From Amphiscolops sp. MND2022 (taxonomy: Eukaryota): DNA of 64,000 bases. The notes beneath the pieces are model-generated. The model saw only the letters and a list, made by a program, of their open reading frames with translations. It was not told the DNA's origin and did not search any database. The translations under genes and the position numbers were made by a program. Position 1 is the first letter of the stretch, and every line of letters begins with the position of its first letter. Shown here one piece after another: positions 25,601 to 60,812 of this stretch. The DNA lies in the NCBI GenBank assembly GCA_964187785.1, contig OZ076409.1:24738001-24802000 (forward strand), given 5' to 3'.

Positions 25601-28600
25601 AGGTAAATTTGAATCCGAAGCATTGTTGTCAGACCCGATAGAATTGGCGGATGAAGTTTGCGGGATCAGCGGTTGCTCCGAAGGTAGAAAGTCGAAATCG
25701 GATTCCGATTCGCTTACGTTGCTACTTGAATTTGTACCTGCTGTAGATGCAGAAGGCACCGTGAGAGAAGGCCCGAATCCAAAAACGAGTCCTTTCTCAT
25801 CGTCCTCTGCTTTTAATTCACCGATGGAAAAATTTTGCTTGTAGACTTTGGTAGGATCTCTTAAACGCCCAGAGCTGCGTCGAGCAAAAAAGTGAGGAAT
25901 GGTGTCGGTGGGTTTGATCAGTGAAGGAGGCCAGTTATCTAGCATTTCCTTGCTCAAAAGAGTACGAAGATCGTCTTGCTTGCTGCACACAACCCGCGAC
26001 ATGAAGTCAATTATAGGCTGGTAGTGTATGATATGAAACACCTGAAAGCGAAACAAATTATTACAAATGAATCTGATATGAAGAAGACTTCAAAGGTTTC
26101 AATTATCAACTTGCATGTGCCAATAGAAACAAGGCAACAGAAACGGAAACTGTCGGGTTTTCTTCACTCAATTCCGGTTTCTGATTAGTGCCAAAAGATC
26201 CCGTCAAAGACAAAGGCAAGAGGTATAGGGGCAGAAACAGACCAGACGTCAAGTATTCCATCAAAAGTTGAGACAATTTGGCAACTCCCAGATTGAAAAT
26301 GTCTTGGAAGTAAGAGAGGTAATCCATATGCTCAGCGCAAAGATCGCGAAGTTTGTCCATTGATGAGTTGCTGAAATGGAATTGGTGACATTTATGTTTC
26401 AATATTTCCAGATTTCAAAAATATTGGCCTCATGTATATCGCAGTGAGTACCAACTTGACATTCATTACACCAACAACATACATTCTTCACACTCACAAC
26501 TTTTTGAAACGTTTGTAATCTGATCCGTAATACGGCAATGTTTACTCCTTTCAAGAGCTCAAATGTGATGTTAACCGATCGGAGGCTGTCATTTTTCTCA
26601 AAAAATAGTTTGTACTTTATTAAATAGAGTATAACTAAATTTTCAAAAACAGGAGTTTTTAGGCATAACTTGTGAGTCATCTCCAGCTCAACACCATTCA
26701 GATTTCAAAAGTATCGCCCCAATTGGATAGTTGTGGAAAACTAATCTAAATTGAAAGCTCACCCATCTACTGAATTTTTGATTCCTGCATTGAGGGTCCC
26801 AGTAAATTAAATGCTTCACAAAGTCCATGTTTTGCTGGGACCATGAATGGATGAAAAATTAAATTACAAAAAATGTAATTCAAATGTACACTACTTCTTT
26901 TGAAAAATGTATATTTTTCTAAGAAAAGTAGAATTTTTAAGCAACCATATAAAAACCGAACTTGAAAAATGATCTGGATTGCACTGCCAAGATATAAAAA
27001 CACGCAGTGGCATTGCGATATTATCATAATACTGTAACAACAAAAATACAACAAAGACTTTTTCTCAAGTATATCACGAAAAACTAATATTGTAATTTCT
27101 TTCGAGTTACGCATTTTATCAACTGAAAACACCAGAAAACCAAAAGCAGCGATTTTCTAGTGAAAGGTGAAATGTTCTCAAAAAGGATGTTCAAAGTTTG
27201 CAGAAAACTTTTTCTTAAAATGTCGCTCACAGCCGAAAAATTAGTTTTTTTTACAATTAATGAGAAAAGTCTCAACACTGAAAAAGCCTGTCAAGAAAAA
27301 TCTCGAAAAAGTGAGAACAATAATTGAAATGGAAGTACCTGATACTGGCACGAGCGAGTTTGTCAATTTCAAGAACTAGTTTTCCAAGATCGTGTGTGAG
27401 GTTGGCGAAGTAAACATGGGCAGCTTTTTCGCAGATGTAGTCCCGAGTATGCATATCTTTCACACGGAAGCAGCTAAGAGTTATAGTTCGCACGGCTGTT
27501 CTCACCATGCTTTCTGAGTGGTTGAAAAATTTCAGAGCCTCAGTCAAAAGCGGGAAGTCTTTGTTCTGCTCGCTATAGAAAAGGTGAACTGAAACAATTT
27601 TTTTTTCGATAGAATTATCATGACATTGCGTCAAGCATTGCCGTATTCCTTTAAGCACAAAACACGCATCTACTATTTTAAAGTGCTTTTTCCCACTAGC
27701 TTTTTCAAAACTGAAAAACATTGGTATACAGAGAAGAATAATATCTGACAGAAAGTACAGAGCCTTCAGTTTTCTCCAAACTCGATATATTCGTTTGCAC
27801 AAGACTTTTGTTGAGCAAGCAAGCTACAAGCAACTGAGCCAAATGCTCTCCGAGAAAACATTTTCGAGAAAGCCATTCAAAAGAAACCACGGGCGAAGAT
27901 ACTAACTGGTTGAAGGATTCAGCTTTAGAGATAAAATTTTGAGGAAAGAAATGTAATACGCCATAACTTCCTCGTCGTTGAAGTCAAATTTATGTACAAT
28001 GATGGATGTCACATGATTGTTGGATAACAGAAAATCTAAAAAAACTCTTCCATTAATTGAATTGACTACTTTGAAAGTATAGAAGTTCGTTTCAGGAAAT
28101 GTACTCACATAATGACGTCTCGTGTGAAATGTTCTCAAAAAGGATGTTCAAAGTTTGCAGTAATTGGACGCAAACAGACTCGCCTGATTTTTGCTTCATT
28201 ATCTTTTTAAAATAGGATAGCATATTTTTCTCCAGAAAGAAACTGAAACAAAGTAAAAGAACATATCTCATTGAGATACAAAAATGCTTAACAAACGTAC
28301 TCTATAAAGCAACTCACTCAAAAACAGTTGAATCGTTTTGGTCACCCCATATCATGATTTCAGATATACTTCTCAAGGTTTCCACTAATAAATTTCGGTT
28401 TTGATTTGTGACTGTGGAGTTCTTGACAAGCACCATGTGTAGATATCTAAACAAAAACAAAAATAAATTAACCGTGTCTGAAATTCCAAACTAGGAAATT
28501 GGCGAACCCATTGCAATAACCAACTGGTAGTTTCCAAAGAAGATTATCTAAAAGTGCAAAATCTGAATTTTATCAGGCATAATGGCATGAGCACATTATT

Positions 28601-28767: not shown

Positions 28768-29219
28768 TCTTACGGAGTTCCCATTACACTGGAAAGAAAA
28801 ACTCCTGTAGTAGGACACAGTAGTGTTGGCCGGTAACCGATACCAACAGAAAATTGAAACTAGAAACCAGTATCTACTAGTCACAAGATTTATGGTAACC
28901 AGTATGTTTCATAAACGGTCTAAAAAACTTAATTTACAGCATTATTTTTTTCTCTCTATCAGATATCATGGGTCTTCGTCATCAATCAAGTGCCATGTGT
29001 TTCATCATGTTGGGGGGAGAAGACACACACCCGTGGTCTGCTACGAACGTATGGAACCCATACTAGCCACTATCCCAGTAACAAAAATAGCAACCAATAA
29101 GCTACTCATACCAGCCACTATCGCAGTCGACCGATAGAATTTTTTAAGCTGCAATGATATGTTTTTTTCTGAAAAAACTGTAATAAATTTTTTCGACCGC
29201 ATCTCTGTCGCTCACAGTT

Positions 29220-29452
29220 TGTTAGAGATCGATGAAGGTCAAAGGACCATTAAAGGTCAACCATCTCAGACTATACCAGACTGAACTAATTTAGTATATT
29301 ATTGTTGTTTGTAAACATGTACCTGTTATTTTATCTTCACTTGCCTGAATCACTTTATCAACTCACAACACAAAACAAAGTATTGACAATAACCACTCTT
29401 CACCAATCTTCCGACAACCCAGCTACGACCAGAAGGAGCTCAGGCCCTAATA
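29220..29452 (+). repeat. 5' LTR of the copia element
   Basis: TGTTAG...CTAATA; 11 differences from the 3' LTR over 233 bp by manual comparison. Confidence 0.95.
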
Positions 29453-29467
29453 GGTTATGGACCCAGC
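29453..29467 (+). promoter_or_regulatory. Primer-binding site of the Drosophila-copia type (internal tRNA-iMet half)
   Basis: GGTTATGGACCCAGC directly follows the LTR and resembles the GGTTATGGGCCCAG PBS of copia. Confidence 0.8.
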
Positions 29468-29978
29468 AATTTGGCGAGTTTGCCTTTTTCCTTAAAAAAA
29501 AAAACTTTTTCTGCTTACTTTGACTAAGCTCGTCTGATCTTATTTTTCATTCTCCATTTTTTCTTTTTGCGTCTCGGATATCCACAATTTTTGTTATTTA
29601 TGCCGCCCGTTACCGGTGTTTCGCTTTCGCTAACTTTGTAGCTTATCTTCGTGGGAATCCCTGTTTTGCTGCCCTCATTTTTGTTTCAGTTACTTCTTTC
29701 TGCCTGTTTCGGGCTTTTGTTGGAGTTTGTGAGGGATGGATCGACCTTTGCAGTATCTCCATGTCTCTGGCAAGGAAGAAGACTTCGCTGTGTGGCAGGA
29801 GCGATTCGAGGGGTTCTGTTTCACGAAGAAGCTTCTGAACGTGCTGAATGGAACAGATGCTGGCACGAATGACAAGAAGTACGAAATTTGGGCGTACTTG
29901 GTACAGTGTCTTGACAGCCGCAGTATCCTGATGCTGACAAACGACTGCAAGGGTGATGGTCCGAAGGTATGGCAACTA

Positions 29979-30328
29979 GGGTGGGCGGAAATAGGTCGAA
30001 GGAACGGGATCGAAAATCAGAGTTAGTCCTCAGGTCGACAATACCAAATTTTTGAATGGGATCGAATCAACTCGGATCGAAATTTTTATAACGTAGTCAG
30101 ATATGTTCACATACCCCTAGTGCCCTGAATGCAGGAGCGAAGCGAAGCGGAGCGACGTGCCATGTGGCCATGCCTCAATGTTGCTACTTGGCGAAGGGAG
30201 CGAAGCGACCGAGCCATACAACAAATACGATAAAAGTCGACCGCATTCCATTCGATCCCTGTAATTCGATCAAAAGGTTCGACCTCAGTCGTTTCGACCA
30301 GAAAAATTCGACCTATTTACAGCCACCC
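29979..30328 (+). mobile_element. 350-bp MITE, Mutator-like (9-bp TSD), inserted in copia gag
   Basis: Perfect TSD TGGCAACTA; imperfect ~22-bp TIR GGGTGG..AAATAGGTCGAA; the gag frame GPKVWQ/LLRDHF resumes once the insert is removed. Confidence 0.9.
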
Positions 30329-32487
30329 TGGCAACTACTGCGGGACCACTTCAACAGCACCGAAACACCGAGGTTGAACCTATTGGAGAAGTTCACAACC
30401 CTGCGCTTGGAGCCCACGGACAGCATGGTTGACTACCTGACTCGAGCGGAGTATGTGAGTAAGCAGTTGGAGCTCGCTGGTGAGAAAGTTTCTGAAAACA
30501 TGTTAACTTCGATAGTTCTTAAGGGTTTGCCTTCCGAATATGACTATTTCAAAACTGTGCACAATTTTTCGAAAGATAAGGCGTCTTTTGCGGAAGTAAA
30601 GAAAGCATTAAAAAATTTCGAAAGTTCTCGTTCAATGGAAAATGTAAGCGTTGCGGTAAAAGTGGACATAAACAAGCCACTTGTAGAGTATTCCAGTGTA
30701 ACTTTTGCAGGCTTTTTGGCCTTGAAGAGAATAATTGTTTCGAGAAAAACCCCGTTTGATTCCTAAGTCAAGTGCTGAGACAGGAGAGTCAAACCTAGCT
30801 GAGGACTTAGTTTTTTTTGCGATGGTAGTGAGACTGCACTCACTAGCCAAAAATGCGAGGTGAAGGAGCACACTTTGGTCATCGACTCTGGTGCTTCCTC
30901 GCATATGTTTTTTGACCGTTTCCTTTTCTTCGACTTTAGCGAAGAAACACAACGCAAAGTAAAAAATGCGAATGGGACTTTTTCGCAAGTTGAGGGTGTT
31001 GGAAATGTTTCTCTTTTACTTTTGGACAAAGAAGGGATCGAACGCTGTGTGACATTTTCCGACTGTCTTTTTCCTTCCTGATCATTCTCATAACTTGATC
31101 AGTGTTAGCAAGTTGAGACAAAACGGGACTCAAGTGAATTTCGGAAAATCTCTGAGCACTTTTGTGAACTAAAGAGCAACTATTCGTTTTGAAGAGCACG
31201 CTAATCTTTACGTTTTGAAAGGAAAGACATTTGATTTTTGCTCTTTTTCCGACGAAAACGAAGAAGAGGTGTTGTGGCATCATCACCTTGGTCACAACAA
31301 TTTCAAAAATGTGAAACGTTTGGCTCATCATGTTTCGGGGATGAGCTTGAAACACGGTGCTTTTGATAAACTTTGTTGTTGTGAAGTTTGCAAAATTTCT
31401 AAGTCACGACGGCAACCAGTATCGCGAAAAATGGAGAAACGAAAATCTTCGAAACTTGATCTCGTCTTCACTGACATTTTGGGACCGATGCCAACTACTT
31501 CGCTTGGTGGCAATCGATACGCTGTTTCTTTTACGGACAGCTACAGCAGGTACTCAGCGGTATATTTTCTCAAATGGAAAAAGGAGTGCCAAGATAAATG
31601 ATTTTTGGGTTCGGGCCTTACACACTGCTTTTTACATTTCAAACCGTTGCCTCACAGTTAGTTTACCAAAAGGTAAAACGCTCTTCGAAATGTTTTTTGG
31701 TAAAAAACCAGATCTTTCCAACTTGAAAGTTTTTGGATGTACTGCTTTCAAACACATTGAAAAGCAACAAGACAAACTTTCCAATAGAGCCACCAAAAAA
31801 GTTTTTGTTGGTTATTCTGAGGATTCCGAAGCATACATTTTGTACAATCCTTATTCTAAAAAGACTTCGTTTTCTCGCAACGTCTCCTTTGATGAGACTT
31901 CTTTCGAATTTTTTTGCTGCGCACCCAAGTCAAAACGTCCGAGCATTTGTAACCGAAAAACCGGCACCGAAACAAGTTTGACTGAAACACAGAAACACTT
32001 TTGCGAAAAGTCGTCAGTTCCTATTTTACCGACTGAAACATTGAATGATTTCGAAACTGAAACAACTCCTTCCCCCGTTGATGTTGTTTCATCTGAAAAC
32101 ATTGATGCCAATGAAAGTAGTGCTTTTTTGCGGTCTCGAAGTGGGAGAGTTATCAAACCGCCTGCGTATCTAGACGACTACGTTCTTTCAACGGATGACG
32201 GCGATGAGGATCTAACTTATCGTGAAGCAATGAAGTCATCGCTTAAAAGCGAATGGATCGAAGCTACTCAAAAGGAGTACGATGCGCTCATTGAGAACAA
32301 AACCTGGGTGCTTTCTCCGCTTCCCCCGGGCCGAAAAGCAATTGGAAGCCGGTGGGTTTTCTAAATTAGGCGACACGACGACGGAACTATTGAAAAATTC
32401 AAGGCTCGTTTCGTAGCCCGAGGGTTTTCGCAAGTTTTTGGGAACGATTACGATGAAACTTTCGCGCCTACTGCCAAACTTTGTACC

Positions 32488-33627
32488 TTGAGGATTTGTT
32501 TTGCGCTCGCTGCTTCTTGGTCGACTTTTGTTTTTCAGTTAGACGTCCGTTCAGCCTTCCTCAATGCGAACTTGAGTGATGAAATTTATATAGAACAACC
32601 AGAAGGTTTCGCGCAAGCGGGGGCTAATGGTGAAACACTTTATTGCAAGCTTCAAAAATGCCTTTATGGTTTAAAGCAAGCAGGGAGGGAATGGAACAAA
32701 ACTTTAACCCAATGGTTTTTGAAGAACGAATTTGTACAGTCTGCCGAGGATCATTGTCTTTTTCGTTGCGATGGGACTAATGGTTCCCAACTTTTTGTAC
32801 TAGTTTGGGTCGACAACATTTTGTACTTTTCAAACAACGACAAAATGCTGCATGATTTCAAGGCGAAACTCAGCGATGCATTCAGCATCGATGATCGTGA
32901 GAAAATGACTTGGTTTTTGGGATGCAATGTTGAACAGTCACGCGGTCGCATTTCTCTTAGTCAGCGGTCATATATAAAGGACATTTTGCGGAAAAGTCAT
33001 ATGTCTGATTGTAAACCAGTCAGTACTCCAGCTATTCCCCATACGAAACAGTCAAAATCGGACTGCCCTATCGAAGGTAGTGAAAAGTCACTTGATATTT
33101 GCGAACAGAAACAATATCGTAGCTTAGTTGGAAACTTAATGTATTTGTCCGTTGTTAGTCGCCCCGATATTTGCTTTGCTGTCTATAACTTAGCACTATT
33201 CGTGTCAAATCCTGGTAAAGCCCATTGGTGTGCATTGAAACACCTTCTCCGTTTTCTCAGGGGCACCGAGTCTCTATCTCTTGTGTATAATCGCTCTGAA
33301 AATCTCAAACTTTTTGGTTTTTTGGATTCCGATTGGGCCACCGACAAGGACGATCGCAAGTCAACTTCGGGTTTTTGCTTCAAACTAAGTCGTTCTGGTA
33401 GTGTTTTCTCTTGGGTGTCCAAAAAGCAAGGGTGTGTGGCACTTAGCTCTTGTGAAGCCGAGTATGTTTCGTTGGCTTTGGCTGCACAGGAAGCAGTCTA
33501 TTTGCAAGGCTTGCTCACTTTCTTCTGCTTGACGACGGTAGACACGCCTGTTCTGTTGTGTGGTGACAATCAAGGGCACTCGCACTGGCCAGCAACCCTG
33601 TCGCCCACAAACGTGCTAAACACATAG
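32488..33627 (+). pseudogene. Copia reverse transcriptase / RNase H reading frame (pol remnant)
   Basis: QLDVRSAFLNA, LYGLKQ, LVWVDNIL, VSRPDICFAV and SSCEAEYV motifs; upstream pol has stops and frameshifts and lacks most of the integrase core. Confidence 0.9.
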
Positions 33628-34000
33628 AAACCCGACACCACTTCATCCGTCAACTGGTTGAGGACAAACGCATTCAACTGTCTTATGTCTCCACAAAAAA
33701 CAATTTGGCTGATATCTTCACCAAGATTCTACCCAAGCCTGCCTTCAATGAGCTCTCATCGCAACTCTTCGTCATTCAGCCACCCCGATCAACAACTTAA
33801 GCCTTGCCTCCCTCACAATTCAATTATTTTACATTACTCATTATTGTGTTTATGTTATCACTGGGACTATGACGACTTTCAGCTTCTCTTCAACTGATGG
33901 ATAGAGCCCTCTCAATCGCTGCCTTGACACGACAGATGGTCAAGCACAGTGTTTCGCCATCATCAAACAACAACCTTCGGAGTCTCTCATCGAGCGGGGG

Positions 34001-34233
34001 TGTTAGAGATGGATGAAGGTCAAAGGACCATTAAAGGTCAACCATCTGAGACTATACTCAACTGAACTAATTTAGAATATTATTGTTGTTTGTAAACATG
34101 TACCTGTTGTTTTATCTTCACTTGCCTTAATCACTTTATCAACTCACAACACAAAATAAAATATTGACAATAACTACTCTTCACCAATCTTCCGACAACC
34201 CAGCTACGACCAGAAGGAGCTCAGGCCCTAATA
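34001..34233 (+). repeat. 3' LTR of the copia element
   Basis: Preceded by the PPT; about 95% identical to 29220-29452. Confidence 0.95.
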
Positions 34234-34619
34234 CAGCTCCTAGAACACAGGCCGCATTGCCGATCTGAAGAGCCATTGAAATCCGTTGCTTCAAAAAGCT
34301 GCCAGCTCGTTGATCGTCGTGCATTTTACAGAGACGCGTGATGGAAACTTCACTAAAAAACCCTGTACTTCCAAGGCCACCGGTTGAAAAATGTATCCAT
34401 TGTCTATTAATTCGCGATACTTCTCAATTTTACGCGCTTCAGCCTCGGTGGTGGTGGTTCCAGGGTTACATGGAGAGCCTTGATTCAGGCGACTGGGTGC
34501 AAGAGCATCCACAACCGTGACATCCCTCACCAGCTGTTTACCCATTTCCCAAGGAATCATGGTAACACCGCCTGGGCGTTTGTCATCGGTTCGGTACAGT
34601 CCACGCGGTTCGAGCATTG

Positions 34620-34968
34620 GGGTGGGCGGAAGTAGGTCGAAGGAACGGGATCGAAAATCAGAGTTAGTACTCAGGTGGACATACCAAATTTTTTAATGGG
34701 ATCGAAACAACTCGGATCGAAATTTTTATAACGTAGTCAGATATGTTCACATACCCCTAGTGCCCTGAATGCAGGAGCGAAGCGAAGCGGAGCGACGTGC
34801 CATATGGCCATGCCTCAATGTTGCTACTTGGCGAAGGGAGCGAAGCGACCGAGCCGTACAACAAATACGATAAAATTCGACCGCTTTCCATTCGATCCCT
34901 GCAATTCGATCAAAAGGTTCGACCTCTGTCCTTTCGACCAGACAAGTTCTACCTATTTACAGCCACCC
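34620..34968 (+). mobile_element. Second copy of the Mutator-like MITE, inserted in the CRE RLE domain
   Basis: Perfect 9-bp TSD CGAGCATTG; same TIRs and body as 29979-30328. Confidence 0.9.
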
Positions 34969-35000
34969 CGAGCATTGAAGGCAAGTTGAGAGATCCCAAC

Positions 35001-37676
35001 TCTATCGGAAAATTATGGCAAATGATGGTTTGCTGAAGGGCAGTAAATTTTTTATCAAACCCAAATTGTTATGGCGGGACAGATTGATTGAGAAATCTTT
35101 GCTAGACATCAGATACAAGTTAATACAGCATGGATTGTCGAAAACATTTTTCAAAATTCGTGACCTGAAATTATTCTACAATGGCGAGGAAGAGGCAACG
35201 GCATTACCTCTTGATCAACTGGTTTCCTCTTTGACAATGTCTGAAGCAAGGGCCTACCTACGGTGACTACCTCAAAAATTCTGTCTCTTAAACATCAATA
35301 GCTTTACCCATCTATCCAAACGTTCAACATTGCTCGATTATGCTATCAAAGAGGACATTAGTCTCCTATTTCTATCGGAAACTTGGCTAAACGACTCTTT
35401 TGATAACCGAGTACTCTCTCTCTCTCTTCGGCATTTTTGAAGTAATCTCTCGCACTGACAGAAACTGTGGTATTCGAGGAGGAGTACTGATATCAATGAG
35501 ACGCGACACAAATATGAACCTGAGAGTTATTCCTTCTGACTTTGACTTTGTCTGCTCAGTTATTTGGCTCCTACCTGAAATAGCTGTTTTATTCCTACTC
35601 GTTTATCTGCCTCCTAAAGGCAGTCCCTATGTAATAAATCCAGCGTCACTAAATCGGCCTATAATGGAAGCTAAAACAGCAGCATCTGGGCTTGTAGATC
35701 CTCAAACAAACATTGTCACTTGCCTGCCTGAAGATTTTAACCTCCCAAAGACTCAATGGTCGTTAATGTCCAGCAACTGCTTACATAAAACGCCATATCT
35801 AAATATCTTCATTGGTCTTGATTTATACCCCATCAATTATCAAGCAACTCACAAAGCTGGAAATGTCCTAGATAACACTCTGACCACTGATAATTTTTCT
35901 CAATTAGAAGTTACTATTGACTATAATCTTCGGATCAATGATCACTTCCCATTACTTTTCCAGTGCTTTCGGGATAACTCTGCCCATCATGCTGATCCTG
36001 TCTAGTGTGCCTTTTCTTTTAGGCCGAAGAACTCAATTTGTTCATTATTTCGTGGTCTTCTTTAGCTTCGAGAATAGTCCCTCCAATAACAACACAAATC
36101 AGTTTTATGCTCCTCTGTCAATGCTTATTCCAAGGATTTTCCGAAAAAAATCCAAGGGAAGACTTCTGAATCCATTCTATTATTCCTCGCACAGTATCCA
36201 TCGTCAAAACAAAATGAACAACCTGAGACGCAAACGTTTGTCTAATCCAGCAAAGAGCCTTGCCTCTTTGCAAACTGCCACTACGGACTTTCAACAATCT
36301 GTTGAGCATGATAAAATTTGTTTCCTTGCTGGGCACAATACAGGCTCAAAAACTGACGCTTTCAACCTCCTAAAATGTCTGCACTTCTCTGATATCCCTC
36401 TTGAAATGTATCACGGTTCTAAAGTGTTGACCAATGACCGGAATATCGCAAACGAGTTCATCTGTTATTTTGCCTCTAACTTCAACCAGCAAGTTTATAA
36501 CTTGAACCCTGATATACTATATTCCGATACCTATTCAGCTGCAATCAGAACTGATGAATCGTTGCAAGATATTTGTGAAGCCAATTTTTTAGACACCATA
36601 TTAGGGACGAAGCGTTCCTCAGCTGTCGTTTTCGATCAGTTTCCTTTGAAGCTCTTACACTTGTGTCCGAGATTTTTTTCCTCTGTTCCGTTTTGTGCCC
36701 CCTATTGTTTCTAAATTTTGTAAACGACATGCCTGCAAATTTTCTCAATGCTTTATGTTGGTTGTACGCTGATGACCTCAAGCTTTTTTCGACAGCCTGA
36801 ATTTTTCTGCTGACCTTACCAGATTAATGAATTAGAATATCTCAAATGGTATGCTGGTAAATGCTTCCAAAACCAAATGCATTTGTTTCAAAGGAATGTT
36901 AATGTCACATTCGAAGACATCCCAATAGACAACGTTATTGCTCACAGCGACATTGGTGTTATTATCAGTCCTACCCTGAAATGGGACCCTCACTTGTCCC
37001 AAAAACTCGCAAAAGCAACCAAGTCTTTCTTCCTTCTAAAACAGATTGTCCCGTGGAATACACCTTCACATGTTAAGTATTCTTTCTATTACAGTCCCGT
37101 TGTATCAGTTCTACTTTACGCCTCACCTTTATGAGCTGCAAGCTTCACAAAATTACAAAAACTTGAACGATTTCAAAAGCGGTCTTTCTATTGGATTTTT
37201 GGTAGAAACATTTCATACGAGCTGCAATTGGTTAAAAACGGGAATTTTCCACTTAGTCTACAAATTGAATTCAACTGTATCTGTCTGCTCCTAGACTTGT
37301 TAAATGGTAAATACAAATTTGATCTTTCTCACCATATTTCTATTCAGGAATCCCAAGGCAGCTCACGGAAACGGGCCTGGAATCCACTCTCAACCCTGGT
37401 CAAGTACCCAAGAAAACAGCCTGAGTCCTTTTTTGTGCGTGCAGTCAGATCGTATAATTACCTTCATCGGCACTGCATCATTGAAAAAAATACGCTCGGA
37501 ACGAAACAGAAAATCATAGCTTATCTTCGGAACACGTCTTTTAATCTTGAAAATAGCTGGTCTTTTTTCATTTGTTGTAACTGTAGTGTATGCAAGGATA
37601 CGGTAAGTATTTGTTAACTTCTCTGTTACGCCAATTTTGGTGCTCCTAAATCGGAGTATTAGGTCTTCTCTTTCTC
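35001..37676 (+). mobile_element. CR1/L2-group LINE, 5'-truncated and internally deleted, inserted in the CRE element
   Basis: ORF1 end, APE motifs (LSETWLND, VYLPP, DFNLP, AGNVLD, DHFPL), RT remnant (LYADDLKLF) and C-terminus (FFVRAVRSYNYL). It splits the CRE frame between LIKQ and LGSLNLPS. Confidence 0.85.
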
Positions 37677-40404
37677 TCTGCTTTATGAGAGAATTGAGAG
37701 TAGCATGACGTGAGAAGCGACCAGCACTCTTGGTGGAAGAAAGACCGTGTAAACCGTCCGGTTCAACTCTGTTACCACAGTGGCGCTTCTCCGCAACACA
37801 AATGTTGGCTCCGAGACGTAAACCAATTGAAAAACGAAGTTGGTGATCATCAAGTTTCAGGCCTAGGTTCTTACAAGGAACAACTCTCAGCCATTGAGAC
37901 CCGAATTTACCTTGTTGAGCGTTGACAACTTTCGAACGTTTGCCATCCATTTTAGAAATCAAATCTTGGGCGGTTTTGACGAAGACAGGTTGTGTCCAAT
38001 TTTTCTACGTTCCATCGAGAGGACTTCTCTGTTCATTCATCAAACTCAATCATTTCTCAAGCGCTTTTGTAAATGAAACCGTCTTCGAATGTTTCCGAGA
38101 AAATCGTCGTGACAAAGTCACTCGAACCAAAAACTAGCCAAAAAGGCGGGAAGTGCTAATAATGATGCGGATGACAGCCCAAGACCACCCATTTCAGCGG
38201 GCAGATCCAGCTGAGTACTCGAAAGTCAGTCACGTACGGTTTTGTCATACTTTTCCAAGAGAGGTGGATGATTAAAACATCTACTAATTCTCGGGAATTA
38301 CAACAACTTTGACAGACTGAAGCAATTTTTCAACATAAAAAAACGATTGTGCGCAGCTAGTTTTTCAACACTTCCATTAAGATTTTCCAGTTCATTGATT
38401 TTCTTTTCCAATAAGTCTGCTTGTGAAGACCAGCGGTGAACCAAGAATGATGAGTTCATCTTTCTTTGGTGTTTTGATCCCGAGGCAAAGTTTTTGGAAA
38501 GATGCTAAAATTGTCGATTGGCGTTTTTCAGTGATGTTCCCAAGGAAAAAAATTCGCATTTCGTGGGTTTAATTTTGAGTCCCAGCGTTTTCTCCGATTC
38601 AACTAATTTTTGAGACCTTTCAAAACGGTTCTGTAATCATCACTTAGATATCCATCGTCAAGGTAACATAAGTTTAGTTTCGACTGCAAACTGTCAATCA
38701 AATCCTGAATGGAATCCGAAAACAAAGCTGGAGACTCAAGATCTCTTTCCTGGGTCGATTCACAAGATTTGATAACTGAATAACCGTAAAAAAGAAAACT
38801 TGGTTGACTGTACGCCCAGTGTGAGTACTTATTAACTTCAGGGTGTATTTCAAAAGTTTTCTCTAGCATGAACTGTCGGTTTATCAAATTGAAAGCGTTT
38901 TCGAAGTCAATTTTCAAATTTACGTTTTCTTTGGGCTTGGGGCTTTCTATCAAACAACGGAAAACATGTGAGGCCAATTCAGCGCCTCTTTTTGTGCCTA
39001 CACCTACTTTTCGACTTCTGTATCTTGCCTGGCGTGATTCGAAGACACGGTATCTGGCACATTTTGCGGATAATTGGCGGAAGGTATTGCCTACAGCGAT
39101 AGGACAAAATCTTCCATCAGGCCTTTTTTAGCGCAACTAGTTTCGCACCAAAGAAGTACGGCCGAAGTTCGAAAGGTACTTTTCCTTCGAGAATTACTTT
39201 CACACGATTTGTTAAGGCTTTGAGAAAATTCAGTCAAGTTTGCCCGTTCGACTTGGCAGTCAAAGTTTTCAAAATTTGGGGCGGAATGCCATCCAACCCT
39301 GCACTAGAGCCATTGGGGAAGGACATGAGAGCCTTTTGAACAAAAAACTCCAAGGTTGAAAAACAATCGATATCTGTGGGGTCCGGAACAGAGCAAGTTT
39401 CCCTTTGCGGATGTTTCAGCTTGAGGGCAGCGTAGTTGTCGACCGTGAAGTATGCAATCTTGTCGTCGCCTACTGCCATTCTGATTCCGGCCTTAACATT
39501 ACCTTCGTCTAATTTAGTGCAAATGGAACGCAGTCGTCGATTCAACTCGCTTTTTTCCTGCGAATTTCTGTCGCGTTTCGGTCTTTTCTTAATGGCACCA
39601 TGTCGAACACGCTGGTTGATAATTGCACTGAGTGATGACCTCGGACGTTTACTTCCTCGAGATGGTTTTTCCAAAAAACAGCTTAGAGAGGAAAGCAATA
39701 AGCACTACAAGGCAATATTTCACGGGTTTTCACAAATATCCTAAACTTTGGGTATCAAATTTTCAGCAAGAGAAACCCGTGAATTGTTAGGAACTCTTTT
39801 CATGTGAACAACGCCTGAGTTAAAAATGGTGTCTGGTATAAAGTTAACATCGTGACACTGAGGGATTGTGTTCACTGAAGCGCATTTACAACATTTACAT
39901 TCGGCAAGGCTCCGGTCCTCCGTTTTTGATAAATTGGCGCATTTTATATGAACCCATCCGTTGCAAAGCCTACAATTTACCCAGTTTATCAACCCTGAGG
40001 GCTTCAGACACATCAGAGCGTTGCAGGTTTTGTTGTTTTTCATCACAACTCAACCTCGAAACCTAACCAATTGCCGGAATACCACATTTGGGTGTGTGCC
40101 CATCTCCCCAAAAAAACAATCACCACAGCAGTGGAGCAATCCGTGTATAAAATAACCTTGAATTGATAAATTGAAATATAAATGGAATTGTCTCACCGGG
40201 TTGTGATGGTTCTTTCAGCCCAAGTGCAGCGACAAACCAACAAACAGCGTCACAGATGTTGTCCAGTCTCAAATTCAAATCATTGCCATCTCTGAAGCTA
40301 TTCAACAAGCCTATCACAACATTTATCACAAAAATCAGTCCAGTTTGCCCGTTCCACTTGGCAGTCAAATCTTTCAAAATTTGAGGCAAAATGCCATCCA
40401 AAAA

Positions 40405-49820: not shown

Positions 49821-52800
49821 GTTGTAAACAGGTCTCGCAGAACTATCGGAATCGCTTGATTTTTTTTGTTTGAGGGTAAACTTCCTTCGTCACGTCACTA
49901 CAGGCCAGATGAAACTAGTTAAAGTAGTTTGAGCACTGTTATTCATCGGAGATGTCCGCCACACTGGTTGTACATATTCGATACTTGTAGGTTCTGCTAG
50001 CAAACGTCTCCGTCCACGTGCAGCATGCATTTTTTCTCATACAATTTATTAAGTTTATCACAACAATTTGTTGGCGTGATAGTATTAGTATTGTGAATCA
50101 GATCGTGTCACACACGATTATTCTTGTGTTCTTCAGTTTGTCAGATTTGAGATAGCTGTGAACGTCTTTTGATTTATTCACAGACCCTGGGTTCGGGCTA
50201 AAACCGGTATGGACGAGTGCTCGTTGTTGCTTATTTAAACGGATTTGATGACTTTCAATGGAATTGAACAATTAAGTAGCAGCAATGATCTTGAGCATAC
50301 TAATTTTGAAACATCTTCTGGTCAGGACACCAATTGTGTTTCATGCGGATTAAAACATTTCAACAAAACTAGTATTCATTCATTAGAAGGCACATACCGA
50401 AGAGGCATCAAGTCTTCATCTAAAAAAAAGCAATTTTAATATATACGCAGGTCTATATTGTTATACAACCTCACAATATCATATCGAAAAATCTAGACGC
50501 TTTCCACAGGAAACAGTTCAGAAAGTGTCTAGATATAAACTATCCGAAAATCCTGAAAAATGATGAATTATATGCCATAACCAAAGTAGTTTCTACTTCA
50601 TAACACATTGAGACGAGACGTAAGGCTCACTTGGGGCATGTTCTGCGACGAAATCTTCCAATCAGAAGAACTCTTCACAATATCAAAAAGTTACCACCAA
50701 AGGGACGGGCCAAGGCCAATATCCTGAAGACCTATTCACACGATTTATCCTCTGACAGTTTGCCGACGTGGCTGATGATGGCTCTGGCAAAGAAATTGCG
50801 AACTCATATTTCTATTTGCTAAACTGAACTGAAGTTTTAATAGACATATAAATCAGTGAATACACCCTCCAAGAGTGTGACACGAATCGGGTCGGAAATT
50901 TTCGGTCACAATTCAAGCGATAAGCCGGGGTCGAGAGAACGGAAACGAAATAAAATGATCGAATCCTCGCATCGAAATGTCAAAATTAGTGATCCTGGTC
51001 GAAACAACTTGGATCGACATATGGCGGTCTACATGAAACCTCCCGATTTGGAATTGATTCAGAGAATAAAACGTGCCTCGAATATGTCCCCGTTTCCTCT
51101 AGTGCCCCGCGGCCCTAGGGGGCCGCTTATGCTCCCATCTTGCTGAGCGAGGTCGAACAGAAGCAAAGACCTAGCGGGAACGGAGATCGCGTAGCGATCG
51201 CGGTGGGTGCTGGTCTTTGCGACGTTGAGGGCGAGCGTACATACACCGTATATGACCCCCATTTTTTTCGATCAATTTCGCAAAATTTTGCCATTTCGAC
51301 CTAGTTATGTCCACCGGAAAACTATATCCCTTGAATTTCGACGTAATTTCTTTTCGACTTGGGTTTGTCCACCAAAAATATTCGACTTGGTTATATGTGG
51401 CCCTCTGAGGAACACTGGCTTGCAACTGGCTCGACGGCATTCAGCAAAGCTTCTAAGGACCCATTTACCTGAATTCTCTCAAGTTTTGTTCTGAAATCCT
51501 GATACCCAAATTGGACTGATAAAGACCTCTCTGCTTTGGTCTTGTTTCAATCTAGTTTGTCATCCGTTTTGCTGTTGTTGAAGTATCATTACCTGTATTT
51601 GATGTTTTTCTAATTGATCTATGTTGCTGAAATTGAAGATTGATGTCACGGTTGTGGATGCTCATACACCCAGTGGCCTAAACAGGGGGTATCAAAAATT
51701 AATTGAGTGAAAATTAATTGCAAATATTTGCGGAGAATTAATTGATTGCAGCAAGTAGCAAATAAAATTAAATGATTTTTGCAAATCAATTAATTGCAAC
51801 TATTTGCAACTTTTGAGCAGCCTAAAAATTGACCTATTATCGGTTGCTACCGCAGTGGCATTTACTTTTTTATAGTCGCCAAATAGACGCGGGTTGAGTT
51901 TGTTCGCCTACTTATGTAATTTTTTTTCAGATCAATTTTTGCAACTATCATTGCCAGTCGCAAAAGACATTGAAATATTTTCATCAAATCCCTGATTGTG
52001 ATAGTCAGTGGAAATGTGTCTGTGGTAAAGTGAAACTTATCAAGATTGTTATTACTGGAAAATATCTCACTTAGCGTCATCAACATTCTCAAGATTGGTG
52101 ATCTACCAGTTCTGAAACCCTATTGTCGTTCCTGCATGTGGGGTGTGAAGTTGTCCAGTAATGGCTTGAATATATTTTTTTCAAAAATTTTGCTACCAAT
52201 ATTTAACAAACCTTATTATTGGTAACTTTCGACTTTTGTCAGCGAACGTTTCTTGAATAATGGAATCCAATTTCAAGGGAATTGTTAAGTTCGAACAAAA
52301 CGACAAACGTATAGAGCGAATGAATACGTGTACATGCTCTCCTAATATACAGTACAGGAGGGATAGCATTGGGGCCCCGCGCTTTAGATATTACTACTTT
52401 TTTGCAAGTTGAATTATCGGATTTCTACAATTTTCAAGTCAAAGGATTCCAACTCAGTGTACTCTGACCTTATTGTTTCGCTGGTTTCTCTTTAAATGGA
52501 TGCAAAAAATTTCATTAGTAAATTAGTTCGGGCTCCAGAACTTCTTGCAGACTATTGTTTCCATTCTAGATGCGGTGAGATGGTAGTGTGCTTTATCTGT
52601 CTGAAGTGTTCGAACATTAATGATCCGTTTTTGGAGGCAAGATTTCATCTTGATCAGTAGCAAGATCCAGAGCAATCGAAATATCAATCTCTCTGTTTTT
52701 TTCTTCAGCACATACCGATTTGCCTTGAAATACTGCTTGATTGTTTGACATACATTTTTTTGATGATTGAGAGTCTATTCATTAAATGCGAGGTACGAAG

Positions 52801-55800
52801 TGTAATCCATGCGTTAATCAATGCGTGTAATCCATCCAAGTAGATACTCTTCTGTGTTGCGTTCGCCTCGGATTGGGGAATCCAGTTTTCCAGAAATCCA
52901 AGCATGCGATTCTTTAACTTTCTGCTCTATTTTAGGGTAAATGAAGTTCTTCCTCCATTATTTCCTTTGATAGCCATTTTCTGTTGAAAGGCATATGTCT
53001 GGCATGTATTTGCAGATACAGGTGGCAACACTATGACGTCTATCGGCTAAGTGTAGACTTTGGCAATTGAATTATTTAACGTCTAACTTGATATGTAGTC
53101 AATCATTTCTTCCAATTTGGATCTCATTTCCATCCTTATACAAATTCTGATCTTCCTCTGTAGTCGTTGAATTCCAGAATCGCTAAGCTCTATGCATTTA
53201 GGCAGCAGAGTTCTTTCCACTTGTCTTTCCCCATAAGTTAGCGATTTTGAAATGAATTTTCGTCCTACTGGAAATTTTTCTAGTTCATTTGTCTTCGCTA
53301 TTGTTTTCCGGCATCCCATGGGTTTATGATCGTCACAATCTTTGATGGTGGTCGCTCCGGAGAGGATCAAACTTTCCAATACGTCGAATTTTGATAACAG
53401 TTGGACTATCATTGAAAAATTTTATGATACCGTCCACTTTTTCTTCTTCGTGGTACAAAATTTGCTTATGCTTTTTATCGGCTTCTGGTATACCGTGAGT
53501 TTTTCTTTGCAAACTAGTATCTTCTTGCTGGAAAAAAGAAATAGGAATATTTTTCTCCTGCGCTTGGATTTGATGTTCAGCAATTTCTTCTTTACATTCT
53601 GACATATTGATTGATTATTGCTCAATCTTATCATGAAGAGGCTTTATAGATGCTTCAACAGTCGAATCAGTACATTCCTTAATCGAATCAACAAAACGTT
53701 TGGTCACACTTGGTTGTTGTAGACCATACTCGACCAGTTGTAAACAGGTCTCGCAGAACTATTGGAATCTCTTGTCTTTTTTTACCTTGAGGGTAAACTT
53801 CCTTCGTGACGTCACTACAGGCCAGATGCAACTAATTTAAGCAGTTTGAGCACTGTTATTCATCGGAGATGTCGGCCACACTGGTTGTACATATTCGATA
53901 CTTGTAGGTTCTGCTAGCAAACGTCCCCGTCCACGTACAGCATGCATTTTATCTCAAACAATTTATAAAGTTTATCACAACAATTTATCGGCGTGATAGT
54001 ATTAGTATTGTGAATCAGATCGTGTCATACACGATTATTCTTTTATTCTTCAGTTCGTCAGATTTGAGATAGCTGTGATCGTCTTTTGATTTATTCACAG
54101 ACTCTGGGTTCGGGCTAAAACCGGTATGGACGAGTGCTCGTTGTTGCTTACGTAAACGGATTTGATGACTTTCAATGGGATTGAACAATTAAGTCGCTGC
54201 AATGATCTTGAGCATACTAATATTGAAACGCGTTCTGGTCAGAACATCAATTGTGTTTCATGCGGATCAAAACACTTCAATAAAACTATTATACATTCAT
54301 TAGAAGGCACAAACCAAAGAGACATCATATCTTCATCTAAAATAAAGCAGTTTTAATATATACGCAGGTCTATATTGTTATACAACCTCACAATATCGAA
54401 AAATCTAGACGCTTTCCCAGGAAACAGCTCAGAAAGTGTCTAGATATAAACTATCCAAAAATCCAAAAAAATGATGAATTATATGGCATAACCAAAGTAG
54501 TTCCTATTTCAGAACACATTGAGACGAGACGTAAGGCTCACTTGGGGCATGTTCTGCGACGAAATCATCCAATCAGAAGATTTCTTCACAATATCAAAAA
54601 GTTACCACCGATTGGACGGGCCAAGGCTAATATCCTGAAGACCTATTCACAAGATTTATCCTCTGACAGTTTGCAGACGTGGCTGACGATGGCTCTGGCA
54701 AAAAAAATGCGAACTCATATTTCTATTTGCTAAACTGAACTGAAGTTTTGATAGACATATAAATCAGTGAATACACCCTCCAAGAGTTTGACACGAATCG
54801 GGTTGGAAATTTTCGGTCAAAATTCAAGCGTTAAGCCGGGGTCGAGAGAACGGAATCGAAATAAAATGATCGAATCTTCGCATCGAAATGTCAAAATTAG
54901 TGATCCTGGTCAAAACAACTTGGATCGACATATGGCGGGCTACATGAAACCTCCCGATTTGGAATTGATTCAGAGAATAAAACGTGCCTTATACATGTCC
55001 CCATTTCCTCTAGTGCCCCGCGGCCCTAGGGGGCAGCTTATGCTCCCATCTTGCTGAGCGAGGTCGAACAGAAGCAAAGACCTAGCGGGAACGGAGATGG
55101 CGTAGCGATCGGGGTGGGAGCTGGTCTTTGCGACGTTGAGGGCGAGCGTACATACACCGTATATGACCCCCCATTTTTTTCGATCATTTTCGCGAAATTT
55201 TGCCATTTCGACCTAGTTATGTCCACCGAAAAACTATCTCCCTTGAATTTCGACCTAATTTCTTTTCGACCTGGGTTTTTCCATCAAAATATTTCGACTT
55301 GGTTCTTTGTCGCCCTCTGAGGAACACCGGCTCGCAACTGGCTCGACGGCATTCAGCAAAGCTTCTAAGGACCCATTTACCTGAATTCTCTCAAGTTTTG
55401 TTCTGAAATCTTGATAACCAAATTAGACTGATAAAAGACCTCTCTGCTTTGATCTTGTTTCAATCTAGTTTGTCATCCGTTTTGCTGTTGTTGAAGTATC
55501 ATTACCTGTTTATGATGTTTTTCTATATGATCTATGTTGCTGAAATTGAAGATCGATGTCACGGTTGTGGATGCTCTTACACTCAGTGGCCTGAACAGGG
55601 GGTATCGGAATTTATTTGAGTGAAAATTAATTGCAATTATTTGCGGAGAATTAATTGATTGCAGCAAGTAGCAATTTAAATTAACTGATTTTTGAACATC
55701 AATTAATTGCAATTAATTGCAACTTTTGAGCAGCCTAAAAATTGACCTATTATCGGTTGCTACCGCAGTGGCATTAACTTTTATTATAGTCGCCAAATAG

Positions 55801-58800: not shown

Positions 58801-59826
58801 AACAACTTGGATCGACATATGGCTGGCTACATGAAACTTCTCGATATGGAATTGATTTAGAGAATAAAACGTGCCTCGAATATGTCCCCAGTTCCTCTAG
58901 TGCCCCGCGGACCTAGTGGGCCGCTTATGCTCCCATCTTGCTGAGCGAAGTCGAACAGAAGCAAAGACCTAGCGGGAACGGAGATCACGTAGCGATCGTA
59001 GTGGAGCTGGTCTTTGCGACGTTGAGGGCGATTGTACATACACCGTATATGACCCCCCATTTTTTTCGATCATTTTTGCGAAATTTTGCCATTTCGACCT
59101 AGTTACGTCGACCAAAAAACTATCTCCCTTGAATTTCGACGTAGTTTCTTTTCGACCTGGGTTTTTCCACCAAAAATTTTCGACTTGGTTATATGTCGCC
59201 CTCTGAGGAACACTGGCTCGCAACTGGCTCGACGGCATTCACCAAAGCTTCTAAGGACCCATTTACCTGAATTCTCTCAAGTTTTGTTCTGAAATCCTGA
59301 TACCCAAGTTGGACTGATAAAAGACCTCTCTGCTTTGGTCTTGTTTCAATCTAGTTTGTCATCCGTTTTGCTGTTGTTGAAGTATCATTACCTGTATATG
59401 ATGTTTTTCTATATGATCTATGTTGCTGAAATTGAAGATCGATGTCACGGTTGTGGATGCTCTTACACCCAGTGGCCTGAACAGGGGGTATCGGAAATTA
59501 TTTGAGTGAAAATTATTTGCAATTATTTGCGGAGAATTAATTGATTGCAGCAAGTAGCAATTAAAATCAATTGATTTTTGAACATCAATTAATTGCAATT
59601 AATTGCAACTTTTGAGTAGCCTAAAAATTGACCGATTATCGGTTGCTACCGCAGTGGCATTAACTTTTATTATAGTGGCCAAATAGACGCGGATTGAGTT
59701 TGTTCACCTATTTATGTAAATATTTTTCAGATCAATTTTTGCAACTAACATTGCCAGTCGCAAAAGACATTGAAATATTTTTATCAAATCCCTGATTCTG
59801 ATAGTGGAAATGTGTCTGTGGTAAAG
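48200..59826. repeat. Tandem triplication of a ~3.9-kb composite TE unit
   Basis: Markers recur at ~3.9-kb spacing: GTCATCAACATTCTC (~48221, 52077, 55989), ATGACTTTCAATGG (~50248, 54165, 58049), CGTGCCT (~51072, 54983, 58870). Confidence 0.93.
50000..50835 (+). mobile_element. RTE-clade LINE 3' fragment (also at ~53920-54745 and ~57810-58635)
   Basis: LDAFHRKQLRKCL.I.YP..L.NDELY and RRKAHLGHVLRR C-terminal motifs; CTGAACTGAA tail as in RTE/BovB-type elements. Confidence 0.8.
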
Positions 59827-60611: not shown

Positions 60612-60812
60612 AATTTTTGATACCCCCTGGGCCTGAATCAAGGCTCCTTATGCAACCGGGGAACCACTGCCACCGAGGCTGAAGCGCATAAGATTGAGAA
60701 GTGTCGCGAATTACTTGTAAAAATCTGAATTGAGACAAGCCAACACAAATAAAACATGATTCACAAGTTAATAGACAATGGACACATTTTTCAACCAGTA
60801 GCAGGGTTCTTT

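What the first reader, a model, noticed from the sequence alone, without database searches (positions are those of the whole stretch)
39882..40025. RLE-type retrotransposon with an N-terminal PHD finger of the H3K4me3-reader pattern
Seen: the CRE polyprotein begins MKNNKT-CNALMCLKP..NWVNCRLCNGWVHIKC..CKCCKC, a C4HC3 finger that runs into the CRE motif KRVP..SR. Established: PHD fingers are known in ORF1 of CR1/L2 LINEs, whereas RLE elements normally carry C2H2/Myb modules. The C-x4-C-x2-P, WVxC, WxHxxC pattern resembles KDM5A PHD3, which binds H3K4me3 through two tryptophans, and both equivalent Trp are present here. Inference: a chromatin-reader-guided retrotransposon that could target promoter nucleosomes, in line with both copies sitting next to gene starts. 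I cannot confirm whether this domain combination is already described.
Basis: partly seen in the sequence, partly recalled or inferred. Interest (0 to 1): 0.7.

Follow-up and report, generated by a model that had tools for sequence, protein, structure and literature searches.

The report
PHD-finger retrotransposon with restriction-like endonuclease
A dead copy of a very abundant jumping gene of the early-branching (restriction-like endonuclease) LINE kind starts its protein with a genuine PHD finger resembling H3K4me3 readers, in place of the usual DNA-binding zinc fingers. Whether this finger steers insertion to active chromatin is untested.

Summary
Minus-strand codons 8-54 (window 40025-39885) encode a C4HC3 finger. 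It opens the single ORF (about 960 aa) of a 3.4-kb non-LTR retrotransposon: PHD, RVPKxSR motif, RT, CCHC, PD-(D/E)xK endonuclease.

The family has over 1,400 5' ends and over 2,400 3' ends in this 1.07-Gb animal genome. Young copies are 95-98% alike.

- **Closest structures:** The nearest solved sequences are KDM5B PHD3 (E 6e-6), then Alfin, PHF23, PHF13, BPTF and KDM5A PHD3. All read methylated H3K4.
- **Binding residues:** Both groove tryptophans are kept. The acidic H3R2 pocket of KDM5A (D1629/D1633) is R/N here.
- **C-terminus:** It folds like the R2 endonuclease (Foldseek E 1e-6).
- **Insertions:** They are dispersed, 5'-truncated and A-tailed, with 8-10-bp duplications and only a TT preference. 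The element is not site-specific.
- **Window copy:** It is dead: frameshifted and split by two other retrotransposons. It runs from 40325 to 28946 and ends about 475 bp upstream of a CLEC16A-like exon.

Chromatin tethering is plausible, but promoter targeting is unproven. Assignment to the CRE clade could not be tested. The scan earlier flagged PHD-bearing RLE elements elsewhere in this genome.

The parts
40330..40401 (-). 72-nt piece of the same family's ORF (element positions 1035-1106), joined about 5 bp upstream of the copy's 5' end. This is a chimeric 5' junction.
   Evidence: blastn of a natural full-length copy against the window; sequence read
40047..40325 (-). 5' UTR of the copy (element positions 5-283). 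There is no ORF1.
39885..40025 (-). PHD finger, residues C8 to C54 (C4HC3), with groove Trp W22 and W31
39777..39803 (-). MKRVPNNSR, the conserved L-K-R-V-P-K-x-S-R motif that opens the region shared by all relatives, with or without a PHD
37677..39740 (-). Rest of the ORF up to about residue 803: linker, reverse transcriptase (about 39127-38546), thumb/linker and CCHC knuckle (about 37800-37732, fourth ligand mutated). Several frameshifts and stops are present.
34619..37676 (.). Foreign block splitting the ORF. It holds an APE-type LINE (plus-strand ORFs 35400-37617, Exo_endo_phos_2) and other repeats.
34233..34618 (-). Endonuclease (PD-(D/E)xK) part of the ORF and the start of the 3' UTR (element positions 2720-3127)
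29220..34233 (+). Copia-type LTR retrotransposon inserted in the LINE 3' UTR. Its LTRs are 233 bp and 95% alike. It is not part of the element.
28944..29219 (-). Last 290 nt of the 3' UTR, ending ...ATGATATCTGATAGAGAG(A)7

Best explanation
This is a dead, nested copy of a young, high-copy, non-site-specific RLE-type LINE. Its single ORF begins with a PHD finger of the methyl-lysine reader class (like KDM5 PHD3, BPTF and Alfin). The finger stands where R2-like elements carry sequence-specific C2H2/Myb DNA-binding modules. Shown here: the anatomy (PHD, RT, CCHC, RLE), the PHD fold and its closest relatives, purifying selection on the finger, and dispersed insertion by target-primed reverse transcription with only a TT preference. 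Inferred: the finger most likely tethers the element's ribonucleoprotein to nucleosomes through a methylated lysine held in the two-Trp groove. H3K4me3 is the leading candidate ligand. Under this reading, chromatin state rather than DNA sequence chooses the region of insertion, and the endonuclease then nicks at a short T-rich site.
For: Anatomy. Full-length natural copies are 3.4 kb with a 283-nt 5' UTR and one ORF. An intact 960-aa relative is P0001. RVT_1 scores E 2e-18. CCHC, RH, E, PD, D and K are invariant across 36 relatives. The C-terminal model (pLDDT 92) matches R2Tg, R2Bm and R2Pm at E 1e-6. PHD. A PDB sequence search gives KDM5B PHD3 at E 6e-6, with both Trp aligned, followed by only H3K4me readers. 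The AF2 model has pLDDT 83-86 over the finger, and the top 50 Foldseek hits are all PHD fingers, mostly H3K4me2/3 readers. KDM5A PHD3 aligns at rmsd 1.6 A. In a scan of 1.84 billion proteins, the nearest non-transposon relatives checked were KDM5 C-terminal PHD, PHD-JmjC and PHD-bromodomain proteins. Selection. dN/dS over the finger is 0.13-0.17 between less-decayed subfamilies. The finger plus the RVPK motif recur in relatives at only 29-46% identity (P0097, P0109, P0115, P0130, P0146). Insertion. Flanks are unrelated, copies are 5'-truncated, A tails are 5-10 nt, and one clear duplication is TTTCGGGG. The first two flank bases are T in 19 and 21 of 28 insertions. N-terminal modules are swapped among relatives: one PHD, two PHDs, OTU plus C2H2, other Cys-rich modules, or none. 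This fits a modular targeting role.
Against: No binding data exist. The acidic H3R2 pocket of KDM5A PHD3 (D1629/D1633, PMC9172573) is replaced by R26/N29 (N/K in P0001), and the first Trp is missing in some distant PHD-bearing relatives such as P0026, P0034 and P0146. No test of insertion bias towards promoters or H3K4me3 was possible because there is no annotation, ChIP data or RNA runs. Many copies lie in or beside other repeats, including their own family, which is not what strict promoter targeting predicts. Pfam support is borderline when the whole protein is scored (20-21 bits).
Confidence: 0.55

Rival explanations
1. Strict reading by the first reader: the finger binds H3K4me3 as KDM5A PHD3 does and directs insertions to promoter nucleosomes.
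For: Both groove Trp are conserved and the best matches are KDM5B/5A PHD3. The window copy ends about 475 bp upstream of the 5'-most recognisable exon of a CLEC16A-like gene, in the same orientation.
Against: The R2 pocket is not conserved: R26/N29 stand in place of D1629/D1633 (PMC9172573). Support is a single anecdote and exon 1 was not located. Half of the independent 5' loci sit next to other copies of the family, and several copies sit inside repeats.
Confidence: 0.2
2. The finger binds something other than methylated H3K4. Candidates are unmodified H3, another methyl-lysine context, a host protein, or nucleic acid. It would then serve nuclear retention, RNP assembly or host-factor recruitment rather than site choice.
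For: Basic or neutral residues stand at the R2-pocket positions, and the first Trp is variable in distant relatives. Some relatives do without any N-terminal finger.
Against: All close sequence and fold matches are methyl-H3K4 readers. The two Trp are kept under purifying selection in this family.
Confidence: 0.2
3. The finger draws new copies to the family's own active copies, or to a shared short DNA target. This would explain the tandem and head-to-head clusters and would not involve host promoters.
For: Twelve of 24 independent 5' loci carry another piece of the family within 1.2 kb. Head-to-head pairs lie 10-75 bp apart, and head-to-tail pairs have spacers of about 100-250 bp. The window copy has a chimeric 5' junction.
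Against: Some clusters are post-insertion tandem duplications with periods of 1277, 3690 and 4034 bp. Template jumping or priming on both strands could give the same patterns without any role for the PHD.
Confidence: 0.05

Closest known systems
R2 and other RLE-type non-LTR retrotransposons (R2, R4, NeSL/Utopia, HERO, CRE groups; PMC4640811, PMC7650587)
   Same: Single ORF with a central RT, a CCHC knuckle and a C-terminal PD-(D/E)xK endonuclease. The C-terminal fold matches R2 cryo-EM structures. Copies show 5' truncation and target-site duplications.
   Different: The N-terminus is a PHD finger and not C2H2/Myb. There are thousands of dispersed copies with only a TT preference, and no rDNA, spliced-leader, snRNA or microsatellite target. 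The RT is only weakly similar to R2 (E 1.6e-4).
KDM5A/KDM5B PHD3, an H3K4me3 reader with a two-Trp groove (PDB 2ma5, 2kgg, 3gl6; PMC9172573)
   Same: C-x4-C start, the CL(K/Q)P(S/E)G loop, DW(I/V)xC and xWxH with both Trp aligned. It is the best PDB sequence hit (E 6e-6), and the fold aligns at rmsd 1.6 A.
   Different: The acidic H3R2 pocket (D1629/D1633) is R/N here. The spacing between ligands 3 and 4 is C-x2-C here, against C-x3-C in the KDM5B PHD3 aligned. The finger sits at the N-terminus of a retrotransposon protein.
PHD fingers in other transposable elements: CR1/L2 ORF1 (Kapitonov and Jurka 2003), Chlamys Penelope-like elements, Rehavkus and Chlamydomonas elements (as reviewed in PMC8557442)
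   Same: A PHD finger acts as an accessory domain of a mobile element and is proposed to act on chromatin.
   Different: In those elements it lies in a separate ORF1 with an esterase (CR1/L2) or is inserted within RT or EN (Chlamys). Here it is fused to the N-terminus of an RT-RLE protein and there is no ORF1.
Chromatin-reader-guided integration in other retroelements, such as chromodomain Ty3/gypsy chromoviruses and the LEDGF-PWWP tether of HIV integrase (from general knowledge)
   Same: The concept is the same: a histone-mark reader steers integration.
   Different: Those are integrase-based LTR elements or retroviruses. No non-LTR element with a demonstrated histone-mark guide is known to me.

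Membership tests
PHD finger (PF00628) | C4HC3 zinc-ligand pattern with canonical spacing | tested here: met
   C-x4-C-x11-C-x2-C-x4-H-x2-C-x14-C-x2-C in the window copy and about 35 other copies
PHD finger (PF00628) | Pfam gathering score of 24 bits | tested here: inconclusive
   Excised N-termini of intact relatives pass: L031 26.0, P0001 26.8, P0130 29.8, P0026 28.1 bits. The window copy scores 12.2 bits. Whole-protein scoring gives 20-21 bits.
PHD finger (PF00628) | PHD fold | tested here: met
   AF2 pLDDT is 83-86 over residues 10-45. All 50 best Foldseek PDB hits are PHD fingers, probability up to 1.00.
H3K4me3-reading PHD subclass (KDM5 PHD3 type) | Aromatic residues forming the Kme3 groove (W1625 and W1635 in KDM5A) | tested here: met
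   W22 and W31 align with the two Trp of KDM5B PHD3 in the HMMER alignment and are kept across the family. Their role in KDM5A is described in PMC9172573.
H3K4me3-reading PHD subclass (KDM5 PHD3 type) | Acidic pocket for H3R2 (D1629 and D1633 in KDM5A) | tested here: not met
   The aligned positions are R26 and N29 (N and K in P0001). Ten of 13 host readers in alignment A1 have D/E at the first position.
H3K4me3-reading PHD subclass (KDM5 PHD3 type) | Measured binding to H3K4me3 | not testable with these tools
   This needs peptide or nucleosome binding assays.
RLE-type non-LTR retrotransposon | Reverse transcriptase followed by a CCHC knuckle and a PD-(D/E)xK endonuclease | tested here: met
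   RVT_1 at E 2e-18. C41, C43, H53, C57, R66, H67, D117 and K148 are invariant in 36 relatives. The model (pLDDT 92) matches R2 structures at E 1e-6.
RLE-type non-LTR retrotransposon | Insertion hallmarks of target-primed reverse transcription | tested here: met
   5'-truncated copies share a common 3' end. There is a short A tail and 8-10-bp duplications.
CRE clade | Placement within CRE in an RT phylogeny | not testable with these tools
   No CRE, HERO, NeSL or R4 reference sequences could be obtained. Named database hits were only uncharacterised arthropod and tardigrade proteins.
CRE clade | Site-specific insertion (spliced-leader genes or telomeres in classical members; PMC4640811) | tested here: not met
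   28 independent 3' flanks are unrelated apart from a TT start.
R2 clade | N-terminal C2H2 and Myb motifs with a 28S rDNA target | tested here: not met
   The N-terminus is a PHD and insertions are dispersed. The RT matches R2 at only E 1.6e-4.
CR1/L2-type PHD arrangement | PHD in a separate ORF1, often with an esterase | tested here: not met
   Full-length copies have a 283-nt 5' UTR and no ORF1. Esterase loci in the genome carry no adjacent copy of this family.

The most novel reading that the evidence does not exclude
This would be a non-LTR retrotransposon whose insertion region is chosen by a histone-mark reader. An N-terminal methyl-lysine-binding PHD finger, captured from or shared with KDM5-type host readers, would have replaced the sequence-specific DNA-binding module of RLE elements. 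That change would have turned a site-specific lineage into a chromatin-guided element with thousands of copies.
Probability: 0.25. Interest if true: 0.8.

Novelty: new variant of a known kind. Interest (0 to 1): 0.5.

Why it matters
RLE-type LINEs such as R2 are the model for target-primed reverse transcription and are being engineered for gene insertion. Their site choice is attributed to N-terminal zinc-finger and Myb DNA-binding modules. A successful lineage that swapped this module for a methyl-lysine reader finger, lost site specificity and reached thousands of copies offers two things. It is a natural experiment in how targeting modules are exchanged, because relatives carry one PHD, two PHDs, OTU plus C2H2, other Cys-rich modules or none. 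It also gives a directly testable case of histone-mark-guided integration by a non-LTR element. If the finger proves not to bind histones, the finding is a modest addition to the list of transposons carrying PHD fingers.

Tried and rejected
- **Literature:** Seven full-text searches found no description of a PHD finger in an RLE-type LINE. They found only PHD fingers in CR1, Chlamys, Rehavkus and Chlamydomonas elements. Kapitonov and Jurka 2003 is not held.
- **Clade assignment:** An RT tree was not possible because no reference CRE, HERO, NeSL or R4 sequences were available.
- **Promoter-bias test:** There is no annotation or ChIP data, and no RNA runs exist for this organism. A search for exon 1 of the CLEC16A-like gene by motif found nothing.
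- **Esterase ORF1 link (lead from earlier scan notes):** Twelve SGNH-esterase loci carried no copy of this family and no PHD within 1.5 kb. This family therefore has no esterase ORF1. The esterase-bearing family noted elsewhere was not located.
- **Tandem arrays:** Only partial loci were mapped.
- **Word-based search with the PHD region:** It found only three close relatives. This reflects the method's limits and does not show rarity, because the ESM Atlas holds PHD+RVT_1 clusters of 201, 97 and 97 members.
- **Rejected reading:** The idea that the finger is a chance Cys/His pattern or a decayed relic is rejected on conservation and dN/dS.
Full report
**1. What is at the coordinates**

On the minus strand, an open frame of 101 codons runs from 40046 to 39741. 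It reads VMKNNKTCNALMCLKPSGLINWVNCRLCNGWVHIKCANLSKTEDRSLAECKCCKC...MKRVPNNSR. The ligand pattern is C-x4-C-x11-C-x2-C-x4-H-x2-C-x14-C-x2-C, which is C4HC3. The quoted sequence and the coordinates are correct.

**2. The element**

The same N-terminus was found at 150 scored places out of 1,434 candidates in the window's 1.07-Gb genome. The 3' end gave 2,455 candidates, and the scored copies were 95-98% identical.

Five natural long copies were aligned. They define a 3.4-kb unit with these features:
- a 283-nt 5' UTR that starts GCCTAATTGTTGTG;
- one ORF, with no ORF1;
- a 3' end of ...ATGATATCTGATAGAG followed by 5-10 A.

An intact 960-aa relative, P0001, is 82% identical and lies on a 3.65-kb metagenome contig. 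The order of the protein is:
- PHD finger, residues 8-54;
- the L-K-R-V-P-K-x-S-R motif, residues 81-89;
- reverse transcriptase (RVT_1, residues 307-507, E 2e-18);
- a CCHC knuckle, then RH...E...RPD...D-V-T...K-x2-K-Y.

In 36 relatives the residues C41, C43, H53, C57, R66, H67, D117 and K148 of the C-terminal block are invariant. An AlphaFold model of that block has pLDDT 92. It matches the linker, CCHC and endonuclease part of the R2 cryo-EM structures 9dou, 8gh6, 9nl2 and 8iby at E 1e-6 to 5e-5, followed by Prp8 and cap-snatching endonucleases. The element is therefore an RLE-type non-LTR retrotransposon. Its RT is only remotely like that of R2 (E 1.6e-4).

**3. The window copy is dead and nested**

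A natural full-length copy maps onto the window as follows:

| Element positions | Window coordinates | Identity |
|---|---|---|
| 5-2694 | 40325-37677 | 89% |
| 2720-3127 | 34618-34233 | 90% |
| 3122-3413 | 29219-28946 | 79% |

- The ORF carries several frameshifts and stops.
- The block 34619-37676 holds an APE-type LINE and other repeats.
- The block 29220-34233 is a Copia-type element (gag, integrase SH3, RVT_2) with 233-bp LTRs that are 95% alike.
- About 5 bp upstream of the 5' end lies a 72-nt piece of the same family's ORF, giving a chimeric 5' junction.
- dN/dS between this copy and a young copy is 0.6-0.7, consistent with neutral decay.

**4. Is the finger a PHD, and of which kind?**

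*Pfam.* Excised N-termini of intact relatives pass the PF00628 cut-off of 24 bits: L031 26.0, P0001 26.8, P0130 29.8 and P0026 28.1 bits. The decayed window copy scores 12.2 bits. Whole-protein scoring gives 20-21 bits. By itself, Pfam support is borderline.

*Solved structures.* A sequence search of PDB chains ranks KDM5B PHD3 (2ma5) first at E 6e-6. It aligns from the first Cys through the last and places both Trp on the KDM5B Trp. The next hits are Alfin-like PHDs, PHF23, EBS, PHF13, BPTF, CFP1, KDM7, KDM5A PHD3 and TAF3.

*Fold.* The AlphaFold model has pLDDT 83-86 over the finger. All 50 best Foldseek matches are PHD fingers, mostly solved with H3K4me2/3 peptides. KDM5A PHD3 aligns at rmsd 1.6 A over 50 columns. 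E-values are weak (2e-3 and above), as expected for a 50-residue domain.

*Whole-library scan.* A HMMER scan of 1.84 billion representatives found 199 proteins at E of 1e-3 or better. Below the element's own fragments, 10 of the longer hits were scanned against Pfam: three KDM5-type proteins with PHD fingers, four PHD-JmjC proteins, one PHD-bromodomain protein and two with a PHD finger only.

The finger therefore belongs, by sequence and fold, to the methyl-H3K4 reader subclass, and KDM5 PHD3 is its nearest solved relative. According to PMC9172573, KDM5A PHD3 holds K4me3 in a groove made of W1625 and W1635 only, and holds H3R2 in an acidic pocket of D1629 and D1633. Here the two Trp (W22, W31) are present. 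The pocket positions are R26 and N29 (N and K in P0001), whereas 10 of 13 host readers in alignment A1 have D/E at the first position.

**5. Is the finger maintained by selection?**

- Ligands and both Trp are kept in nearly all copies read.
- Between less-decayed subfamilies, dN/dS over the finger is 0.13-0.17 (the counts are small).
- Fragments from more distant lineages, at 29-46% identity, keep the finger followed by the RVPK motif: P0097, P0109, P0115, P0134, P0130/P0020 and P0146.
- Relatives at 31-43% RT identity carry one PHD (P0026) or two (P0034).
- Other relatives carry different N-terminal modules ahead of the same RVPK motif. These are an OTU protease plus C2H2 fingers (P0056), an unclassified Cys-rich module (P0012, P0019, P0025, P0042, P0052, P0071), a C-x2-C...H-x-H module (P0017, P0029, P0040), or nothing.
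- The ESM Atlas holds clusters of 201, 97 and 97 members of about 1,000-aa proteins with PHD plus RVT_1. Cnidaria and Arthropoda are recorded among their taxa.

The N-terminus is thus a swappable module in this lineage. The PHD version is old and not confined to this genome.

**6. Where the element inserts**

- The 28 independent 3' flanks are unrelated to each other.
- The first two flank bases are T in 19 and 21 of 28 cases, against about 31% expected.
- Many copies are 5'-truncated.
- One clear target-site duplication is TTTCGGGG, and another is about 10 bp with extra bases at the 5' junction.

The element is not site-specific, unlike most CRE, R2, R4 and NeSL elements (PMC4640811). HERO is described there as largely non-specific.

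Copies cluster. Twelve of 24 independent 5' loci have another piece of the family within 1.2 kb. The arrangements include head-to-head pairs 10-75 bp apart, head-to-tail pairs with spacers of about 100-250 bp, and tandem arrays.

**7. The gene-start claim**

Only one PHD-bearing copy is in the window. The pieces at 60.6-63.2 kb are 3' fragments of a diverged relative.

Once the nested Copia is recognised, the copy's true 3' end is at 28946. That is about 475 bp upstream of the 5'-most recognisable exon of a gene with an FPL domain (PF09758). The exon starts near 28470, and the gene's exons run from 28376 to 27470 on the same strand. By my recollection of the human protein, the gene is CLEC16A-like. 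Its first exon was not found and no RNA runs exist. The copy is near a gene's 5' region, but this is a single case, and present-day positions are also shaped by selection.

**8. Mechanism**

The best-supported reading has three steps, all inferred:
- The PHD finger replaces the sequence-specific DNA-binding module.
- It tethers the RNP to nucleosomes through a methyl-lysine held in the two-Trp groove.
- The endonuclease then nicks at a short T-rich site, and the element integrates by target-primed reverse transcription.

The steps shown here are the anatomy, the fold, the conservation and the insertion hallmarks. The ligand and any regional bias are inferred. Rival readings are listed separately.

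**9. Novelty**

PHD fingers are known accessory domains of transposons, including CR1/L2 ORF1, Chlamys elements, Rehavkus and Chlamydomonas elements (PMC8557442). RLE elements are described with C2H2/Myb or protease modules (PMC4640811, PMC7650587). I found no description of a PHD-RT-RLE architecture in the searchable literature. Repbase could not be consulted, and Atlas clusters show that such proteins exist unnamed.

The scan itself had already flagged PHD-bearing 'CRE-like' RLE elements with an esterase ORF1 elsewhere in this genome. The present family has no ORF1.

Verdict: a new variant of a known kind, of moderate interest.

**10. Method note**

All searches and folds used natural copies.

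Noticed in passing
window 29220-34233: A Copia-type LTR retrotransposon (gag, integrase SH3-like, RVT_2) with 233-bp LTRs 95% alike is inserted in the LINE's 3' UTR. The LINE sequence overlaps by about 5-6 bp across the insertion, as expected for a target duplication.
   Followed up: partly
window 27470-28470, minus strand: Exons of a host gene with an FPL domain (PF09758), CLEC16A-like. The 5'-most recognisable exon starts about 475 bp downstream of the LINE's 3' end. Exon 1 was not found.
   Followed up: partly
window 40330-40401: A 72-nt piece from the middle of the same family's ORF is fused about 5 bp upstream of the copy's 5' end. It could come from template jumping at the end of reverse transcription or from insertion beside an older fragment.
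   Followed up: partly
L002/L003, L006, L011, L014, L015, L016, L019, L021, L022, L027, L030; also L041, L047, L059: Copies of the family cluster far more than their genome share predicts: 12 of 24 independent 5' loci. Head-to-head pairs have 5' ends 10-75 bp apart, head-to-tail pairs have spacers of about 100-250 bp, and tandem arrays have periods of 1277, 3690 and 4034 bp.
   Followed up: partly
window 51642-51682, 55555-55595, 59441-59481: A 41-nt stretch identical in origin to element positions 2814-2854 (endonuclease-coding part) recurs three times at about 3.9-kb spacing. It lies inside the region that another note describes as foldback elements sharing a hairpin cassette.
   Followed up: no
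window 60631-63242: 3' fragments of a diverged relative of the family (73-92% identity), three on the plus strand and one on the minus strand. None has a PHD.
   Followed up: partly
proteins P0012, P0019, P0025, P0042, P0052, P0071; P0056; P0034: Relatives with the same RVPK-RT-CCHC-RLE body carry other N-terminal modules: an unclassified Cys-rich CxC-like module with no Pfam match, an OTU protease with C2H2 fingers, or two PHD fingers.
   Followed up: partly
L031 4136-4486, L032 3927-4281, window about 34800-35000: An unrelated repeat starting GGTGGCTGTAAATAGGTCGAATTTTTCTGG lies next to or inside three copies of the LINE. It was not identified.
   Followed up: no
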